This document shows positions 42,544-50,352 of a stretch of DNA of 64,000 nucleotides, piece by piece (position 1 is the stretch's first letter; every line of letters begins with the position of its first letter). Source of the DNA: Selaginella moellendorffii. Taxonomy: Eukaryota > Plantae > Lycopodiophyta. The notes beneath the pieces are model-generated. The model was given only the letters and a program-made list of their open reading frames with translations, searched no databases and was not told where the DNA came from. The DNA lies in NCBI RefSeq assembly GCF_000143415.4, contig NW_003314268.1:3108559-3172558 (forward strand), in the 5' to 3' direction. The position numbers and the translations under genes were made by a program.

Positions 42544-44706
42544 ATGAATGGGCAGCACAGCGGAGATTCGAGCGCGGTTTCGCGAATTCGATCGTGCCGG
42601 ACGCTGTCACAGGCCAAAGATCTCCACGCCGAGCTGCTTAAATCATCACCCGGGATCACAAACACTTTCCTCTCGAATCTTCTGCTCCAAATGTACTCGC
42701 GATGCGGGAGCGTCGACCTCGCGAGGCAAGTCTTCGATTCCATTCCGTCCAGGAACGATTACAGCTGGGCGCTGATGCTCACGGCTTATGCCCAGAACGG
42801 GAATCTCCACGATGCCAGAAATCTCTTCGACCGGATGCCCGAGAGGGATGTGGTCACCTTCAATGTCATGCTTAGCGCGTATGCCCAGCAAGGGCATCTG
42901 GAAGATGCCAGAAATATCTTTGACGCGATGCCGGAGAGGACGCTTATCTCGTGGACAGCCATGCTTTCGGCATATGCCCAAAGAGGGCATCTGAAAGAAT
43001 CTGTGAATCTCTTCACCAGGATGCCTGAGCTTGACACGGTATCTTCCACAATGATGCTCTCCGCGCTGTCGAAGCGGGGAAAGCTCGCACAGGCAAAACG
43101 AATCTTTGACGAGATGCTCGAGAGGGATGTGTTCTCGTGGAACGCGCTGCTGGCAGGATATTCCCAAAACGGCCAACTGGATGCCGCGTGGAGCCTCTTC
43201 AAATCCATGCCGGCCAGGAATCGAAACCAGATCACCTGGGATACTTGCCTGACGGCTCTACTCGAGGGAGGGCGTTTCGAGGAAGGTAGCGCCGTCTTCC
43301 GGCAAATGCCCGCCCGGAGCATCGTGTCGTGGACGGCGATGCTGGGCGCGCTTGCGGAGGCGGGCAGAACCGACCAGGCAAAAGAGATATTCGACAGCAT
43401 CCCGGAGAGGGATCTTGTGTGCTGGACGTGCATGCTGACGGCATATGCCCATTTCGGGGATATTGTGGCAGCTCGCCGCATGTTTGATTCCATGCCCGAG
43501 CAGGACATGATCGCCAAGAACGCCATGCTGGCGGCATATGCCGGCAGTTCTCAGCTAGATCAGGCCAAGGGGGTGTTTGACGGTATGTCCGAAAGGAATC
43601 TAATCTCTTGGAACTCCCTGCTCATGGCATATGCCGAGAACAAGGAGTTTGCCTTGGCAAAGAGCCTCTTTGACAAAATGCCCGAGAGAGATGTGCTGTC
43701 GTGGAACTCCATGCAAGCAGCGTGCTTGCAAACCAAGCGCCAGGATGATGCCACGCGTCTCTTTTCGTCCATGCCGGAGACGAACTTAGCGACGTGGACT
43801 GCCATCCTGGCTGCAAATGCCGGATCCGGGCATCTTGACAAGGCAAAACATTTGTTTCAGAATATTCCCGAGAGGAGCGCCGCGAGCGCCACCTTTATGA
43901 TCGACGCCTATTCCGAGCGAGGCAACCTGGAAGAGGCCAAGAAAATATTCGATGAGATGCCCGAGAAAGATGCCATCGCATGGACCTCCATGCTGGTGGC
44001 ATATGCCCGGAGCGGGCATATTGACGAGGTAAAGAGCGCGTTCAATGGAATGCCCGAGCAAGACACGGTCGCCTCGACGGCGATGCTCTTCGCGTATGCC
44101 CGGAACGGGTATCTCCAGCAGGCCGAGGAATTCTTCGCCGCCATGCCCGAGAAGGACATCGTCTCCTGGAACTCGATGCTCGTTGCCTACAGCCACAGCC
44201 AAAGCCTCTCCAGAGCAAAGGCCTTCCTGCTCGCAATGCCAGACCGCGACACCATCTCCTGGAACTCCATCCTTGCGGCGAATTCTCACAAGGTTGGCGA
44301 AGGTAGCTTCGAGCAAACGATGGAGCTGTTTTGCAGCATGTCCATGGATGCCGTCCCAGCCGACGACGCCACTTTCATCTGTGTTCTTCTCGGCTCCAGC
44401 CATGGAGGCCGCCTCTACGACGCGCGCCAGTGCTTCGTGTCCATGGGCTTCGACTTTGGAGTGCCAGCCACCAAGCAGCACTACTGCTGCATGGTGGATC
44501 TCGTGGGTCGGGCCGGATACTTGAGAGACGCGGAGGAGCTCGTCGAGACGATGCCGTTTGTTCCAGATCTCGTGGAGTGGACGTGCTTTCTGGGAGCTTG
44601 CAAGACCCAAAAGCATCGAGGGAGCGGTGCTACGAGAAAGCTCGACCTGCACAAGCCGCAAACTTATGTTATGGCTTCCAACCTTTGTAGTCAAGAAATC
44701 GTTTAG
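42544..44706 (+). CDS. PLS-class PPR protein with a long run of 31-aa repeats and a truncated E domain (organellar RNA-editing factor type), 720 aa
   Basis: Tandem (A..IFD.MPERD..SW..ML.AYA..G) repeats; terminal TFICVLLGSSHGG, HYCCMVDLVGRAG, MPFVPD..W..FLGACK; no DYW domain. Confidence 0.93.
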   Translation: MNGQHSGDSSAVSRIRSCRTLSQAKDLHAELLKSSPGITNTFLSNLLLQMYSRCGSVDLARQVFDSIPSRNDYSWALMLTAYAQNGNLHDARNLFDRMPERDVVTFNVMLSAYAQQGHLEDARNIFDAMPERTLISWTAMLSAYAQRGHLKESVNLFTRMPELDTVSSTMMLSALSKRGKLAQAKRIFDEMLERDVFSWNALLAGYSQNGQLDAAWSLFKSMPARNRNQITWDTCLTALLEGGRFEEGSAVFRQMPARSIVSWTAMLGALAEAGRTDQAKEIFDSIPERDLVCWTCMLTAYAHFGDIVAARRMFDSMPEQDMIAKNAMLAAYAGSSQLDQAKGVFDGMSERNLISWNSLLMAYAENKEFALAKSLFDKMPERDVLSWNSMQAACLQTKRQDDATRLFSSMPETNLATWTAILAANAGSGHLDKAKHLFQNIPERSAASATFMIDAYSERGNLEEAKKIFDEMPEKDAIAWTSMLVAYARSGHIDEVKSAFNGMPEQDTVASTAMLFAYARNGYLQQAEEFFAAMPEKDIVSWNSMLVAYSHSQSLSRAKAFLLAMPDRDTISWNSILAANSHKVGEGSFEQTMELFCSMSMDAVPADDATFICVLLGSSHGGRLYDARQCFVSMGFDFGVPATKQHYCCMVDLVGRAGYLRDAEELVETMPFVPDLVEWTCFLGACKTQKHRGSGATRKLDLHKPQTYVMASNLCSQEIV

Positions 44707-44732
44707 TTTTCTTTAGCAACCGAGAACTTGCT

Positions 44733-46004
44733 CTACTCGGTGATCTCTTCGCGATCGTGGAGGAGGACATTGCTCGGCCACTCCACAATCTTGTCGAAGT
44801 ACTTGGCAGGGACACACTGCTCAAAGCCTTCCGTGAGCACCACCCCGTTTTTCGAGACGTAGAACTTCATCCCGTCCGCCATAGCTCGAGCAGCGTTTAC
44901 AAAGACGAGAGCATCGCAGCTGCCTCGCATTCCGCTCACGACTTCCCCGGCTCCGGGCAGGCCAGCCGCAAAGTGGACGTGCTTCCTTCCCATCGTCTTG
45001 AGGCCATCCCGCAAGATGCCCGGCAACGCGTGCTTGAAAGTTCCATGGACACACACCGCCAGCATGTTATCGTCTATGGAGATCTCTTCCAGCAGATCGT
45101 CGCTACAAACGGCATCGAGCAGCGTGTGCCCCTGGTTTGCTCGAATCAGAAGCTCGCCACTCTCGTCCACCATCGTCGCGAGCCTCTCCTTGGAGTTCTG
45201 CTCCACGGCCTGGAGCACCTCCTCCACAGTGTGCGCGCTCAGTGGAACCTTGGACCGCGTTGTGAAATCCAGCCGGAGGAGGTCCGCCACCTTGCAGAAG
45301 CCATCGCTGCGCATCTCCAGGTTGAGCTCCGCAGCTCGGTGCCTCAAGATCTTGGTCAGTGCCCGACCCAGAGCGTTGATCCGGCCACTTCCCTCCACCT
45401 GGTGGCCTTTCATCTTGGTTTCGCCGGTCTGATGATCGCTATCTCGCTCTTGCTGCTTGAGCACATTCATCACCTTCTTCCCAAACCTTGCATGGATCAC
45501 TGGTCGCACGTCCTCTACTTCTTCCTTGGAGAGCTCCTCGAGGACTGGAATTAGATCCAAAAGCCCGCGATCAGTACTGAGATTGTGCCTCTTGAATCGC
45601 GAGACGAGGACCAAGTTGTCCGGATTCAGCACGCACTTGGAGCTCGTGTCGTCGACGATGATCACTCGATTTAGGGGCCGCTCGAGCACCGCCAAGTCCT
45701 TCACTTTGCCCCCCTTCTTGCACGAATCCAGGTAGAGCCTGCGGCTGAAGAACTCCTTCGCGGGATCTAGCACGTCCAGAATCGTCTCTGCGCGGCGCTG
45801 CGCGCGCGACGTGAAGGCCACCACATCGAAAAGCTTTGCCATTCTCTCGAGAAACTTGCTAAGATGCGGTCGCTTGAGGATCATCGATCGCCCGAGCTCG
45901 TCGCCTTGGAGACGGATCGCGGATCCCACCAGCTCGGGACTTACACGGGCATTGATCTCACACATGAGCGTGCCGCACACGTCTAGCACCAGCGTCTTCG
46001 CCAT
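44733..46004 (-). CDS. Fusion protein: N-terminal NIF/FCP1-SCP-like HAD phosphatase domain plus C-terminal Tpt1/KptA RNA 2'-phosphotransferase; single exon, 423 aa
   Basis: HAD part: KTLVLDVCGTL, KRPHL..FL, FTS, LDP..F..RLY.DSC, KDL...R.L..VIIVDD. Tpt1 part: LTKILRH, DGF..V.DLL, KER, IRANQGH, HGT, GL..MGRKHVHF, SGMR, FYVS.NGVVLTEG. Confidence 0.9.
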   Translation of the reverse strand: MAKTLVLDVCGTLMCEINARVSPELVGSAIRLQGDELGRSMILKRPHLSKFLERMAKLFDVVAFTSRAQRRAETILDVLDPAKEFFSRRLYLDSCKKGGKVKDLAVLERPLNRVIIVDDTSSKCVLNPDNLVLVSRFKRHNLSTDRGLLDLIPVLEELSKEEVEDVRPVIHARFGKKVMNVLKQQERDSDHQTGETKMKGHQVEGSGRINALGRALTKILRHRAAELNLEMRSDGFCKVADLLRLDFTTRSKVPLSAHTVEEVLQAVEQNSKERLATMVDESGELLIRANQGHTLLDAVCSDDLLEEISIDDNMLAVCVHGTFKHALPGILRDGLKTMGRKHVHFAAGLPGAGEVVSGMRGSCDALVFVNAARAMADGMKFYVSKNGVVLTEGFEQCVPAKYFDKIVEWPSNVLLHDREEITE

Positions 46005-47859
46005 TAAGAACCCTAAGGCTTAGGGTTACATGTAAAACCTTAATAATTATCGATTGTGAGAAATTAATGTCAATGAGATTTATTTATTTTCTAGAAGATA
46101 AATACCATATATTTATACATAATTTTAAAATATAATTACAAAATCTACAATAATAAAGAGGAATTGGCTGCCGAATCCATCCAATCAAAGCCATCAAATG
46201 GGGGGTAATTTGGTAAATATCAGTTTTTAATTGTGTGTCCTGAAATATTTTTGCAAAGTTTGGGCTGGCCAATGGGCACATGGCATGGCCTGGGCTGGGG
46301 AAAAGGTGTGAGCTACACCTGTTTGTTTGTGCACTACAAGAGGGATAAAACTCTCCTTTTACTGCAACTCCTCAGCCATGAAGTTTCCAAGGGAAGCAAG
46401 ATAGGAGGTGGCCACTGACTAGCATTGCTGAGGCCCAAAAGCTTGCATTGCTCCAGAAACCCAAAGATTGGCACTTCTATTGTTGTGCCCAATGCCATGA
46501 GGATTATGCTGGGCATTACAATGAAAAATTGCTTGGCATGTTGTTTGTCAGCCACTGGCACTAGAGGAGGGGCATTCATGGCTTACCTGCTCCTTATTGT
46601 GGCAAATCCGCATGGTCATCAGGATGATAAGTTTTTTACTTTCTTTACTAGATGAATTCATGGGTGTAGAGATTAGGACACTGCATGTTGGGTGCTAGCT
46701 CGACTTTGATAGTAAGTTCTATTTCTTGCTAATTGTGATGCCCATGGGAAGTGTGGTCTTGTGGCAATGCACAGTGCTCTTGCTAATCCAAGTTGTACTA
46801 GACTATGTATGTCTTTGGTGGCATCACCAGATTAAAATCCAAAATTGGTATAGATCTGCATTTTGTTTAATGGTTTCCCAAGAGAGTGAATTTATTTTTA
46901 ATTCCTTATGAATAAAATACACGGAAGCTTATAATATTTGAATATTTTAGGTTAAAATTAACTTTTATAATTTAATATAACAGTATTTATAAATATAATA
47001 AGAAAATTATATTTTAAACAAGATGGCCTATTTAGATATCACTAAAACATATGGAATCTAACACCAAGTGATTGATATACAAAATGTGGGTTGGTTTATT
47101 TTTATCAGAGTGTAAGACGATCAAAGTTCTAATTGTTAATACAAACAAAATAAACAACTTTAAGAATAAAAGTATTTATTATATTTTTATATGTAGCCTT
47201 AGATATTTCCTAACTGCAAACATAGTTTATTTGAACATAATACTATGGAATAAAATATTTGAATTTACAGTTTCTATAACATATATACTTATAAAATATA
47301 TTATTAATAATTGTTTTCTTGGATGGATCTGGGTAGTAATATATTAATGTTCCTACACATTTGTTGTTTTATATTCTAAGAAAAATGCATAATTAAGTAA
47401 TGTCTTGCTAATAAATAAACTAGTAATAATTATTCTTAGTAATTAATCTCTTTTTAATAAAATTCTAAGGCAAGTTTATCCTAATTTCCATATAACATAT
47501 TATTAATAATAAAAATTTTATTTTTCACATTTTTTTGAGTTGGGTATTTTTCTAAATATATTTTAATTTCCAAAAGAAATTGTATCTAACATTTTTTATT
47601 AATGAATATTTATTCTTACTTATGCCTAGATATTATCAAGTTTATAAGAGCAAAATTGTTGCCTTTTGGCTGTCGTTGTGGAGCACACTCATCATTCTCT
47701 TGCTGGAGTTGGATTTGGAGCTGCTTCACGCACTCATACTCCTACAACAGCAAGACTTCCTCATCACACAACTGCATCCTTGATCTCTACACAAAAAGAC
47801 TCTTCCTCTTCCTTTTCACGTTAAAACCTTGGGACAACATTTTGAAATACTGTGGCTCT

Positions 47860-50352
47860 ATGTGAGCTTCGTGGGTACTCTCCCCACCTTCTGTTTTTGG
47901 GTGCCCTAGCCATTTGGCTAAAGCAAAATTCTAATAAGCCACACTAAGTATCCAAGTAAGTAGTGCTAGATAACTTGGTGAGGTGTTCAAGAGCCAACTT
48001 TAACTCCCTTAAAAGATCGAATGGTCGATACTCCTAATCTAAGTGTGAGTTGTTTGTCTATCTGTATTCACTTTAGCCTTAGACTCTTAGTGGTTATATC
48101 ATCACCCCTCACATAGATATAGCCTTCCTTGGTCACACTGGCTTTTCTTGGCCAAATTAGTTTTCGAGTCCAAAGGTGAAAGCCTAAAGTGATCATCAAG
48201 CAGTTTAGTGAGCTCCAAAAGAATGGTAGGGAAGATTCCAATGGCTTGGAGTACTAGTCTCAGTCTTAGTCTCGGTCTTGGTCCTAATCTTGGTCCTCAT
48301 CTCGGACTCCTTCTCATACTCCATCTTGGACTTTTTTTCGGACTCAGTCCCGAAACTTCCATGTGTCACAACACTTGCCATGTGTTAGTGTGAGACACAA
48401 ATCCCTAAGCCCCAAAGTGGAGCCGAAAGAGTGCCACATGGTAGTGGCCGAAGCAAAAACCAAACGAGCATAACACGTTTGGACTAAAAGGCTCCAACTT
48501 AAAAGGTTGAGAGCGGGAGTGGAACTCCCAACGGAGTGCTCAAGGAACGAGCATGAAGTGAGCAATAAGCGAGGCTCCAAAAAGGGACCCAAAAGGACTA
48601 ACACATGACACGTGGGAGTGTCCGAGATGGAGTCCGAGTTGGAGTCTGAGATGGAGTCCGAGATGGACCCGAGTTGGAGTCCGAGATGGAGTCTGAGATG
48701 GACCCGAGATGGAGTCCGAGATGGACCGCAACGAAGTCCAGATGGAGTCCGAGATGGAGTCCGAGTTGGAGTCCAAGATGGAGTCTGAGATGGACCAAGA
48801 CGGAGTTCGAGATGGAGTCCGAGATGGACCTGAGATGGAATCTGAGATGGAGTCCGAGATGGACCCGAGATTGAATCCGAGATGGAGTCCGAGATGGACC
48901 GAGATGGAGTTCGAGATGGAGTCCGAGATGGAGTCCGAGATGGACCTGAGATGGAATCTGAGATGGAGTCCGAGATGGACCCGAGATTGAATCCGAGATG
49001 GAGTCCGAGAAGGACCCGAGATGGAGTCCGAGGTCAAGACCGAGACCGGGACTGAGACTGAGACCAGGACCAAGACCGAGACCAGGACCGGGACCGAGAC
49101 CGAGACTGAGGCCGAGGCCGAGTCCGAGTCCGAGTCCAAGTTCAAGTCTGAGAGGGTGAAAGCCCAAAGCGTTCGTCTCCCAGACCCTGGGGGGTTTGGT
49201 GAGCTCCAAAAGTATAGTAAGGGGGAGGACTGTAGTAGAGCCAGTTTGGCCAGGAAAGGCCAGTTTGGCCCAAGAAGGCTGTACCCAGTGTTGGGTGATG
49301 AGCTGCCCACTGGGAAGTCCAAAACTAGAGTGAACACGGATCGACAAGCGGGGTAGCTTGTGAAGTGTTCAAGAGCCGACTCTAGTTCCCCCAGGAGATC
49401 AACTGGCCGATGCTCCCAGTCCAAGTGTGGGTGGCACTACCTACTTGGATACCAGGCGTGGCTCAACGGAACCTCGCTCTAAGCCCATGGCTAGAGCACC
49501 TAAAGGCGGAAGGTGGGGAGAGTACCCACGGGGCTCGTGTAGGGCCACAGTGTTCCGAAATGTTGTGCCAAAGTCCCAAACAAGGGAAAGGAGGAGGAGT
49601 AGTCCTCTAGTGCAGTGACTAAGGATACGGTCACATGGTGAGGAAGTCCTAGAGGACCATGGGACTTAGTGGTCGGGCCTATGAGCCTTGATCTAGTGGT
49701 AGTGTTGGTGAACACGGCCATGGACAGAAAAGGATCTTGGTGGGGACTGTTAAAGGGGATATTGGGGAAGGCTATTCCCCATGTCTGCGGGCATCTCAAG
49801 GATGCTAAGGAGTGGATCTAGGATGGTCACTCATGGACGGTTGGCCCAGTCTTTGAGAGATGGGACCACAATGCAGATGGTGTTGGACCACTGGTGTGAC
49901 CAAGGTGAAGGGGCATGGCCTTAGCTTAACGGGCCAGTATGTTGGTGGTACCTTGGGGTGTCGAGGACACGTGGAGCACTTGGACCAAGTGCAAAGGTTG
50001 AGTGGTGGGGATGCCATTCTCGGGGTTAGCAAGCCCATGTCCAAAATAGGACTTATGGGGGTTGTAAGTGAGACTCCCCCAAGTAGTCAGAGGTGTGGTT
50101 AAGTGAGTAAAGTAGAATGGAAAAATTAGTCACTTACAATTAGTTCTTTTTGTGTCTAATTTTAAAGACTCATTCACCAATTGCTTCATGCTCATTCCTC
50201 GAGCAATTTGTTTAGAGTTCCACTCCCACTCTTGACTTTCTAAATCGAAGTTTTTGGTTTAAACATGTTATGCTCATTGGACTTCTGTTTCAACCATTAT
50301 CATGTTGTACACTTCTCATTCCACTTTGGGGCATAAGGATTTATGTCTCACA
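47860..50352 (-). mobile_element. Degraded family-A LTR (47860-48388 and 50144-50352), split by a younger solo LTR
   Basis: Sequence on either side of the insertion is contiguous in LTR coordinates and ends TGTCTCACA at about 50352. Confidence 0.75.
48389..50138 (+). mobile_element. Family-A solo LTR
   Basis: TGTGAGAC...CTTACA; TSD GTTAG/ATTAG (1 mismatch). Confidence 0.88.

What the first reader, a model, noticed from the sequence alone, without database searches (positions are those of the whole stretch)
44733..46004. Intronless HAD(FCP/SCP)-phosphatase-Tpt1 fusion: a candidate two-enzyme RNA-end / ADP-ribose processing protein
Seen: one uninterrupted 423-aa ORF joins a complete NIF/FCP1-like HAD domain (about 46004-45490) through a short polar linker to a complete plant-type Tpt1 domain (about 45385-44760). 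The Tpt1 Arg-His-Arg-Arg catalytic tetrad appears present (ILRH, KER, MGR). HAD motifs II-IV (FTS, KDL, VDD) and the nucleophile Asp are kept, but DxDxT reads DVCGT (general-acid Asp to Cys). Established: Tpt1 moves the RNA 2'-phosphate to NAD+, releasing ADP-ribose-1'',2''-cyclic phosphate, and can ADP-ribosylate phosphorylated nucleic-acid ends; FCP/SCP enzymes are pSer/pThr phosphatases. I know of no described plant protein with this architecture. Inference: a lineage-specific chimera that either couples phospho-protein (e.g. Pol II CTD) recognition to RNA 2'-P removal or ADP-ribosylation, or handles phosphorylated ends and by-products; the altered HAD may be a substrate trap.
Basis: partly seen in the sequence, partly recalled or inferred. 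Interest (0 to 1): 0.85.

Follow-up and report, generated by a model that had tools for sequence, protein, structure and literature searches.

The report
Expressed phosphatase-like–Tpt1 fusion gene in spikemoss
A spikemoss (Selaginella moellendorffii) gene joins an SCP/NIF-type phosphatase fold that lacks one catalytic aspartate to an apparently intact RNA 2'-phosphotransferase (Tpt1); it is transcribed, conserved on both haplotypes and not described in any searchable paper, so it is a rare natural Tpt1 fusion worth a bench test.

Summary
Window 44733-46004 (-) is one intronless 423-aa ORF with a full NIF/SCP-type HAD domain (residues 3-167) and a full Tpt1 domain (211-393).

- **Organism and annotation:** Selaginella moellendorffii. 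The exact protein is already in NCBI nr. Older JGI models split it in two.
- **Seen before:** this scan met the other-haplotype allele earlier (s1-334468), with a similar reading.
- **Expression:** contigs from three independent studies cross the domain junction, and the upstream spacer is uncovered.
- **Constraint:** both haplotypes keep the ORF (423 and 424 aa). Omega is about 0.22, from only 12 substitutions.
- **Tpt1 half:** the Arg-His-Arg-Arg tetrad is intact (R221, H222, R274, R340).
- **HAD half:** it keeps D8, T65, K102 and D118-D119, but motif I reads DVCGT, so the general acid/base Asp is lost.
- **Fold:** the AlphaFold model shows two confident domains on a disordered linker.
- **Relatives:** a second S. 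moellendorffii gene (530 aa, both active sites degenerate) and decayed copies in two Adiantum ferns share a single fusion origin.

Most likely this is an active Tpt1 paralogue tethered to a catalytically impaired, phosphate-binding SCP fold. That function is inferred, not shown. I class it as a new variant of known kinds, of moderate to high interest.

The parts
44733..46004 (-). Complete intronless CDS (423 codons plus stop) of the NIF-Tpt1 fusion gene
   Evidence: ORF list. The exact protein is in NCBI nr/EukProt as P0121. A 424-aa allele lies on the other haplotype.
45504..45998 (-). NIF / FCP-SCP-type HAD domain, residues 3-167
   Evidence: Pfam PF03031, 128.7 bits. Foldseek TM 0.78 to human Scp1. 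pLDDT is mostly 80-97.
45969..45983 (-). Degenerate HAD motif I, D8-V9-C10-G11-T12 (canonical form DLDET). The nucleophile Asp is kept; the second Asp is Cys.
   Evidence: Sequence and alignment to named small CTD phosphatases. The other haplotype has the same motif.
45393..45440 (-). Inter-domain linker, residues 189-204, predicted disordered
   Evidence: AlphaFold2 pLDDT below 50 for residues 189-204; pTM 0.55.
44826..45374 (-). Tpt1/KptA RNA 2'-phosphotransferase domain, residues 211-393
   Evidence: Pfam PF01885, 179 bits. Foldseek TM 0.87 to mouse and human TRPT1.
45339..45344 (-). Codons for R221-H222, the first two members of the Tpt1 tetrad
   Evidence: Aligned to R16-H17 of RslTpt1 7kw8. 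Roles from PMC6097658.
45183..45191 (-). Codons for K272-E273-R274 (K-x-R; the third tetrad member is R274)
   Evidence: Aligned to K62-K63-R64 of RslTpt1 and to Lys66/Arg68 of CthTpt1 in PMC6333775.
44985..44987 (-). Codon for R340 (in MGRKHVHF), the fourth tetrad member
   Evidence: Aligned to R119 of RslTpt1.
46005..46064 (-). Transcribed 5' leader (the minimum extent seen)
   Evidence: Contigs are collinear with the genome up to 46049 (X11) and 46064 (X3). No coverage from 46070 to about 48600 except one 32-nt piece in X11 (46617-46648).
46110..46117 (-). TATA-like TATAAATA in the AT-rich upstream region; a candidate core promoter element
   Evidence: Read from the sequence. It lies about 46 nt upstream of the furthest contig end. 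Its function is inferred only.

Best explanation
This is a real, expressed, selectively maintained S. moellendorffii gene. It encodes a Tpt1 paralogue carrying an N-terminal SCP/NIF-type HAD fold on a flexible linker.

The HAD half keeps the phosphoryl-acceptor Asp, the phosphate-binding Thr and Lys, and the Mg-binding acidic pair. It has lost the second Asp of DxDxT, the general acid/base. It is therefore probably a very poor phosphatase, or none at all, and acts as a phosphate- or phosphoprotein-binding (targeting or regulatory) module.

Housekeeping tRNA-splicing Tpt1 activity is presumably supplied by the two free-standing Tpt1 genes in the same genome, so this fusion is a specialised extra copy.

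Shown: gene structure, transcription across the junction, intact ORFs on both haplotypes, residue conservation, folds, and a single origin of the fusion family. Inferred: catalytic competence of the Tpt1 half, impairment of the HAD half, and a binding or targeting role.
For: - **One ORF with two full domains**.
- **Transcription across the junction.** Single contigs span 44856-45999/46049 in runs from three separate studies. Apart from one 32-nt piece in X11, the 2.5-kb AT-rich spacer is uncovered in all four runs.
- **Constraint.** The haplotypes are 423 and 424 aa and differ by one in-frame codion... see note: one in-frame codon. Omega is 0.22 overall (NIF half 0.16, Tpt1 half 0.30). The 1 kb upstream is only 90% identical, with 17 gap openings. 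Among transcript contigs there are 8 synonymous and 5 non-synonymous SNPs.
- **Tpt1 active site.** The tetrad, K272, the H320-G-T322 block and R360 are all present by alignment to solved Tpt1s. Roles come from PMC6333775 and PMC6097658.
- **HAD active site.** Motif I is DVCGT, while T65, K102, D118 and D119 are kept. In Scp1 the first Asp is the phosphoryl acceptor, and the second helps bind the metal and is the likely general acid/base (PMC3215212).
- **The +2 position varies in the family** (C, W, R, R).
- **Fold.** Mean pLDDT 84.8, linker 189-204 disordered, pTM 0.55. TM 0.87 to TRPT1 and 0.78 to Scp1.
- **Free-standing Tpt1 genes** P0125 and P0144 exist in the same genome.
Against: - No biochemical data exist for either half.
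- The runs are only guessed to be RNA, and contigs cannot show transcript starts. An internal start giving a Tpt1-only product (Met179, as in the old JGI model) is not excluded.
- Omega rests on 12 substitutions.
- A flexible linker and pTM 0.55 give no sign of physical coupling between the domains.
- The sister gene has lost both active sites yet keeps its ORF, so the family's function need not be catalytic at all.
- The fern copies decayed, so the fusion is dispensable in at least one lineage.
- No binding partner for the HAD half is identified. The CTD-binding pocket residues of Scp1 were not checked.
Confidence: 0.6

Rival explanations
1. It is a true two-enzyme protein. The HAD half is still an active phosphatase despite Cys10 and works in the same pathway as Tpt1. 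For example, it might remove the phosphate from ADP-ribose-1''-phosphate, the downstream product of Tpt1 plus a cyclic phosphodiesterase. It might instead trim RNA 2'/3'-terminal phosphates, or dephosphorylate the Pol II CTD.
For: - The nucleophile Asp, T65, K102 and D118-D119 are all kept, and the NIF half has the lowest omega (0.16).
- HAD and other phosphoesterases are found next to NAD+-dependent RNA-repair modules in phage systems, and a viral KptA-Nudix fusion is read as by-product processing (PMC9503650).
Against: - The second Asp of DxDxT is the proposed general acid/base and helps bind the metal in Scp1 (PMC3215212). It is Cys here and W or R in relatives, so no conserved replacement exists.
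- The NIF family lacks the cap domain usual for small-molecule HAD phosphatases (my own knowledge of HAD classification).
- No fixed domain-domain geometry is predicted.
Confidence: 0.2
2. The fusion has no special function. The Tpt1 half is simply a redundant third Tpt1, and the HAD half is a passenger slowly decaying after a chance fusion.
For: - The catalytic Asp is lost.
- The sister gene has degenerate motifs and a higher omega of 0.54.
- The fern copies are pseudogenes.
- The linker is flexible.
Against: - The NIF half shows fewer non-synonymous changes than the Tpt1 half (2 N and 4 S; omega 0.16) and folds with high confidence.
- The fusion predates the split of the two Selaginella paralogues (about 45% identity), yet the ORF and the HAD motifs II-IV persist.
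Confidence: 0.13
3. The locus yields two separate proteins, as in the original JGI models (131-aa NIF fragment and 245-aa Tpt1 starting at Met179), through an internal promoter or internal initiation. The fused polypeptide would then be minor or absent.
For: - The JGI models EFJ20672.1 and EFJ20673.1 split the ORF.
- Contigs cannot define transcript starts (note).
Against: - No stop codon or spacer separates the halves.
- The JGI NIF model is itself partial: it starts at Met41 and lacks motif I.
- Contigs are continuous from the 5' leader through the junction.
- The same fused frame is kept in the paralogue and was ancestral in the ferns.
Confidence: 0.05

Closest known systems
Tpt1/KptA/TRPT1 RNA 2'-phosphotransferases (yeast Tpt1, Runella and Clostridium thermocellum Tpt1, human TRPT1)
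   Same: The C-terminal half is a full-length homologue: PF01885 at 179 bits, 36-37% identity and TM 0.87 to mammalian TRPT1. It keeps the Arg-His-Arg-Arg tetrad, the K-x-R lysine and the HGT block.
   Different: It carries an N-terminal 200-residue SCP-like domain. It is a third Tpt1 gene beside two free-standing ones in the same genome. Its activity is untested.
Schizosaccharomyces pombe Tpt1-Yae1 (PMC12810181)
   Same: It is a natural Tpt1 fused to an unrelated domain. That paper states that all Tpt1 enzymes studied before were single-fold units, so fusions are rare.
   Different: The partner domain differs (Yae1, at the C-terminus). The S. pombe protein is the only, essential Tpt1 of its organism, whereas this gene is an extra paralogue with an N-terminal partner.
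Small CTD phosphatases Scp1/CTDSP1, CTDSPL2 and plant SSPs (FCP/SCP family, NIF domain)
   Same: The N-terminal half has the same fold (TM 0.78 to Scp1) and 31-37% identity to named members. It has the insertion domain and motifs II-IV. Its nearest outside relatives in the tree are CTDSPL2-like proteins.
   Different: The DxDx(T/V) signature is broken (DVCGT). There is no N-terminal extension. The fused NIF domains sit on a long branch of their own (SH-aLRT 100, stem length 0.84).
Tim50 and other NIF-fold pseudo-phosphatases
   Same: Tim50 shows that an SCP-like fold can work as a binding module without phosphatase chemistry. UniRef labels the relatives 'TIM50' automatically. Tim50 structures match at TM about 0.7.
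   Different: The protein starts three residues before motif I, so it has no mitochondrial presequence or membrane segment. Scp1 and Scp3 score higher than Tim50. The nucleophile Asp is retained.
Bodo saltans virus KptA-Nudix fusion (PMC9503650)
   Same: It is a KptA/Tpt1 domain fused to a phosphoesterase-type domain, and is interpreted as processing ADP-ribose derivatives.
   Different: The partner fold differs (Nudix), the context is viral, and the partner active site is presumably intact.

Membership tests
Tpt1/KptA RNA 2'-phosphotransferase (PF01885) | Profile match above the curated threshold over the whole domain | tested here: met
   179 bits against a cut-off of 26; profile positions 5-177 of 177.
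Tpt1/KptA RNA 2'-phosphotransferase (PF01885) | [quoted passage not shown] | tested here: met
   R221, H222, R274 and R340 align to R16, H17, R64 and R119 of RslTpt1. The tetrad is defined in PMC6097658 and PMC6333775.
Tpt1/KptA RNA 2'-phosphotransferase (PF01885) | Bilobed fold (winged-helix RNA lobe plus NAD+ lobe) | tested here: met
   The AF2 model of residues 205-423 has pLDDT mostly above 80. Foldseek gives TM 0.87 to 7yw2/7yw3 and 0.79 to 6e3a.
Tpt1/KptA RNA 2'-phosphotransferase (PF01885) | NAD+-dependent removal of RNA 2'-phosphate, or ADP-ribosylation of phosphorylated ends | not testable with these tools
   This needs an enzyme assay or yeast tpt1-delta complementation.
FCP/SCP (NIF, PF03031) Mg-dependent protein phosphatases | Profile match and HAD/SCP fold with insertion domain | tested here: met
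   128.7 bits against a cut-off of 21.8, profile positions 1-160 of 160. TM 0.78 to Scp1.
FCP/SCP (NIF, PF03031) Mg-dependent protein phosphatases | DxDx(T/V) catalytic signature (nucleophile Asp plus second Asp) | tested here: not met
   Motif I is D8-V-C10-G-T12 on both haplotypes; the second Asp is Cys. It should therefore not be filed as an active SCP phosphatase.
FCP/SCP (NIF, PF03031) Mg-dependent protein phosphatases | HAD motifs II (Thr/Ser), III (Lys) and IV (acidic pair) | tested here: met
   T65, K102-D103 and D118 are invariant in the 12-sequence alignment. Position 119 is D or N.
FCP/SCP (NIF, PF03031) Mg-dependent protein phosphatases | Phospho-Ser/Thr (CTD) phosphatase activity and the CTD-binding hydrophobic pocket | not tested
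   The pocket residues named in PMC7281111 were not mapped, and activity needs an assay.
Tim50-type import receptor (NIF-fold pseudo-phosphatase) | N-terminal presequence and membrane anchor preceding the NIF-like domain | tested here: not met
   The protein begins MAKTLVLD, only three residues before motif I, and an in-frame stop lies six codons upstream. The 'TIM50' label on relatives is an automatic UniRef name.

The most novel reading that the evidence does not exclude
The dead-looking SCP fold is a phospho-epitope reader (for example for the phosphorylated Pol II CTD or another phosphoprotein). It would deliver an active NAD+-dependent RNA 2'-phosphotransferase/ADP-ribosyltransferase to a specific site, which would be a phosphorylation-guided RNA-end modification system. 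In addition, the gene family may have arisen inside the Selaginella lineage and reached Adiantum ferns by plant-to-plant horizontal transfer, where it then decayed.
Probability: 0.12. Interest if true: 0.8.

Novelty: new variant of a known kind. Interest (0 to 1): 0.58.

Why it matters
Until 2026, Tpt1 enzymes were regarded as single-fold, stand-alone units (PMC12810181). What they do outside tRNA splicing is an open question in the field (PMC6333775, PMC6573784).

A naturally selected fusion of an apparently competent Tpt1 to a phosphatase-derived fold is a Rosetta-stone type clue. It suggests a link between Tpt1 chemistry and a phosphorylated partner or product, and it is directly testable with standard assays.

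The family also offers three contrasting states: a gene with a competent-looking Tpt1 half, a paralogue with both sites degenerate but the ORF retained, and decayed fern copies. The fern copies sit inside an otherwise Selaginella-only Tpt1 clade, which makes this a candidate case of lycophyte-to-fern gene transfer.

If the fusion proves functionally neutral, it remains a minor lineage-specific curiosity.

Tried and rejected
1. **Assembly or annotation artefact: rejected.** Two haplotypes carry the ORF, there is no intron, and contigs cross the junction.
2. **Common architecture: rejected.** All two- and four-stretch hits among the best 150 of the exhaustive search were checked with Pfam. They are tandem Tpt1-Tpt1 (P0129, P0130, P0131, P0134, P0145, P0148), 4x NIF arrays (P0151, P0192), Tpt1 split by inserts, or Tpt1 with unannotated N-terminal extensions. 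Only P0136 and P0236 are NIF-Tpt1.
3. **Word-indexed search with the HAD half alone.** It gave one distant hit. A profile of three NIF halves gave only generic SCP-like proteins plus the A. nelumboides fragment.
4. **Metagenome scans.** A junction-motif DNA pattern (the positive control in the window worked) and a protein-based scan both found nothing.
5. **First combined alignment (A3).** It mixed the two domains and was discarded. A4, made from domain-cut pieces, was used for folding.
6. **Retrogene origin inferred from intron loss: not supportable.** The free-standing Tpt1-B also has its whole Tpt1 domain in one exon.
7. **Orthology of the two fern loci by flank alignment: not shown.** Only the gene region aligns, at 73%.
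8. **Primary paper on Scp1 D98A.** It is not held, so a review was cited instead.
10. **Search limits.** The 50%-identity representative library can hide fusions under Tpt1-only representatives, and the word-indexed search misses relatives below about 50% identity. Absence elsewhere is therefore not proven.

Full report
**Observation.** Window 44733-46004 on the minus strand is one uninterrupted 423-codon ORF. An in-frame TAA lies six codons upstream of the ATG, and the upstream region is sharply AT-rich with a TATAAATA at 46110-46117. Pfam finds a complete NIF/FCP-SCP HAD domain (residues 3-167, 128.7 bits) and a complete Tpt1/KptA domain (residues 211-393, 179 bits). NCBIfam agrees at the subfamily level.

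**Organism and annotation status.** The closest database proteins are from Selaginella moellendorffii. The exact 423-aa sequence is already in NCBI nr and EukProt. The original JGI annotation split the ORF into a partial 131-aa NIF model and a 245-aa Tpt1 model starting at Met179. This scan had already met the allele on the other haplotype scaffold (s1-334468), and that follow-up reached a similar reading. No searchable paper mentions a NIF-Tpt1 protein or a Selaginella Tpt1.

**Expression.** Twenty public runs hold the stretch. Their contig totals (20-57 Mb) are transcriptome-sized, but they are only guessed to be RNA. I laid four runs from four studies on 44100-50000.
- In X1, X4 and X11 a single contig runs from 44856 to 45999 or 46049, across the domain junction at about 45385-45490.
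- In X3 three overlapping contigs tile the same span, up to 46064.
- In all four runs the AT-rich 46070-48600 spacer is uncovered apart from one 32-nt piece in X11 (46617-46648), as expected for RNA-derived assemblies.
- Contigs cannot define transcript ends, so an additional internal start is not excluded.

**Selection.** The second haplotype scaffold carries an intact 424-aa ORF with one extra in-frame codon, which is also seen in run X11.
- Between haplotypes there are 7 synonymous and 5 non-synonymous differences. Omega is 0.22 overall, 0.16 in the NIF half and 0.30 in the Tpt1 half.
- The neighbouring PPR gene has omega 0.28.
- The 1 kb upstream is only 90% identical, with 17 gap openings.
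- Across the transcript contigs there are 8 synonymous and 5 non-synonymous SNPs.
- The counts are small, but the pattern is that of a constrained coding gene in both halves.

**Active sites.** Alignment to solved Tpt1 structures puts R221-H222, K272-x-R274 and R340 on the essential R16-H17, K62-x-R64 and R119 of Runella Tpt1. H320-G-T322 and R360 fall on its H99-G-T101 and R137. The residue roles come from PMC6097658 and PMC6333775. So the Tpt1 half looks catalytically complete.

In the HAD half, alignment with named small CTD phosphatases shows the canonical DLDETL replaced by DVCGTL. T65, K102-D103 and D118-D119 are kept. In Scp1 the first Asp is the phosphoryl acceptor. The second contributes to metal binding and is the proposed general acid/base (PMC3215212; also PMC7281111). 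Loss of this residue should cripple phosphomonoester hydrolysis, although phosphate and Mg binding may persist. That last step is my inference from general HAD enzymology.

**Structure.** AlphaFold2, run on a domain-cut alignment of 86 sequences, gives mean pLDDT 84.8. There are two confident domains, a disordered linker at residues 189-204 and pTM 0.55, so no fixed orientation between the domains is predicted. Foldseek matches mammalian TRPT1 (TM 0.87) and human Scp1 (TM 0.78).

**Relatives.** An exhaustive phmmer search of 1.84 billion representatives, followed by Pfam checks of every multi-stretch or N-terminally extended hit in the top 150, found only two other NIF-Tpt1 entries.
1. *A second S. 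moellendorffii gene.* It is an intact intronless ORF of 530 or 534 aa on its two haplotypes (RefSeq XP_002987040.2). It has an acidic METKV-repeat linker and degenerate sites in both halves: motif I is EVWDL, and the Tpt1 motifs read LRQ, TKKL and PMYLVM in place of LRH, K-x-R and GRxHVH. Its omega is 0.54.
2. *An Adiantum capillus-veneris locus.* It needs at least three frame changes to be read through. A profile search added an A. nelumboides locus with an in-frame stop and an early end of similarity.

Both fern copies lack one nucleotide in the same TGC codon of DGFCK. A shared ancestral frameshift is therefore the simplest reading. Their flanks do not align, and the gene region is 73% identical.

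**Origin.** In a careful ML tree of Tpt1 domains, the fused copies (this gene, the Selaginella paralogue and the Adiantum relic) form a clade with support 98/96. That clade is sister to the free-standing Selaginella Tpt1-B (97/88). With weak support (59/87), all Selaginella Tpt1s group together apart from other land plants. In a quick tree of NIF domains the four fused halves form a clade with SH-aLRT 100 on a long stem, the two Selaginella genes pair (95), and CTDSPL2-like proteins are the nearest outsiders. Both halves therefore point to one fusion event that predates the Selaginella duplication. The fern copies, nested in an otherwise Selaginella-only clade, fit either lycophyte-to-fern transfer or ancient paralogy with many losses. 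Taxon sampling here cannot decide between these.

**Mechanism.** The best-supported reading has two parts.
- An active Tpt1 paralogue performs NAD+-dependent 2'-phosphate removal or ADP-ribosylation of phosphorylated RNA ends.
- It is tethered by a flexible linker to a catalytically impaired SCP fold that still has a phosphate-binding pocket and serves as a binding, targeting or regulatory module.

Three observations argue against a special role for the Cys and for loss of phosphatase chemistry:
- The +2 position varies in the family (C/W/R/R).
- No inter-domain contact is predicted.
- The paralogue persists as an ORF without either active site.

The low omega of the NIF half argues that the domain is still needed. 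The rivals are a genuinely bifunctional enzyme (for example acting on ADP-ribose-1''-phosphate or RNA end phosphates; compare the HAD and Nudix associations in PMC9503650), a functionally neutral fusion, and separate products from one locus.

**Comparison and novelty.** By sequence, residues and fold, the protein is a member of the Tpt1 family. By homology it belongs to the NIF fold family, but it fails the DxDx(T/V) test and should not be called an SCP phosphatase. It is not a Tim50. The only characterised Tpt1 fusion is S. pombe Tpt1-Yae1, published in 2026 as the first exception to single-fold Tpt1s. This is therefore a new architectural variant of known families. It is already present as an uncharacterised gene model, and it is restricted, as far as these databases show, to Selaginella plus fern relics.

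**Limits.**
- The runs are only inferred to be RNA.
- Substitution counts are small.
- The protein libraries hold only predicted proteins. The 50% clustering can hide fusions under Tpt1-only representatives, and the word-indexed searches miss distant relatives.
- Plant genomes could not be searched at the DNA level.
- The two metagenome scans were empty, and the pattern's positive control in the window worked.

Noticed in passing
window 42544-44706 (+): An intronless 720-aa PPR gene converges on the fusion gene. Only 26 nt separate the two stop codons, and a 410-nt contig (44473-44882) spans both 3' ends in all four runs, so the two transcripts probably overlap antisense at their 3' ends. The arrangement is the same on the other haplotype (L005).
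   Followed up: partly
L004:3001-5711 (S. moellendorffii scaffold GL377566.1): The free-standing Tpt1-B gene (P0125), the closest relative of the fused Tpt1 domain, lies tail-to-tail with a poly(ADP-ribose) glycohydrolase (PARG) gene and overlaps its 3' end. This puts two ADP-ribose enzymes side by side. PPR genes flank the pair.
   Followed up: no
L002:5001-6593 and L006:2001-3605: The paralogous NIF-Tpt1 gene (530 and 534 aa) has an acidic METKV-repeat linker that varies by an in-frame 4-codon indel between haplotypes. Its HAD nucleophile and three of the four Tpt1 tetrad residues are lost, yet both ORFs are intact (omega 0.54). It is a candidate double pseudoenzyme.
   Followed up: partly
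L001:4677-5911 (Adiantum capillus-veneris chr CM043944.1) and L003:5001-5800 (A. nelumboides): These are decayed NIF-Tpt1 copies in two ferns. They share a 1-nt loss in the DGFCK codon. The annotated fern models (KAI5083648.1 and the 113-aa P0285) are fragments. The A. capillus-veneris model uses a predicted intron that removes conserved Tpt1 residues. This could be lycophyte-to-fern transfer.
   Followed up: partly
proteins P0129, P0130, P0131, P0134, P0145, P0148; P0151, P0192: The representative library holds proteins with two to four tandem complete Tpt1 domains, and others with four tandem NIF domains. Their origin is unknown (the library gives no names).
   Followed up: no
proteins P0135 (Diphasiastrum), P0137 (Psilotum), P0139 (Riccia): The Tpt1 proteins of a clubmoss, a whisk fern and a liverwort carry N-terminal extensions of 240-330 residues with no Pfam match.
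   Followed up: no
window 44757-45554 (+): A 265-aa antisense ORF lies inside the fusion gene and is also open on the other haplotype. I take it for a by-product of the GC-rich coding strand and have no evidence that it is a gene.
   Followed up: no
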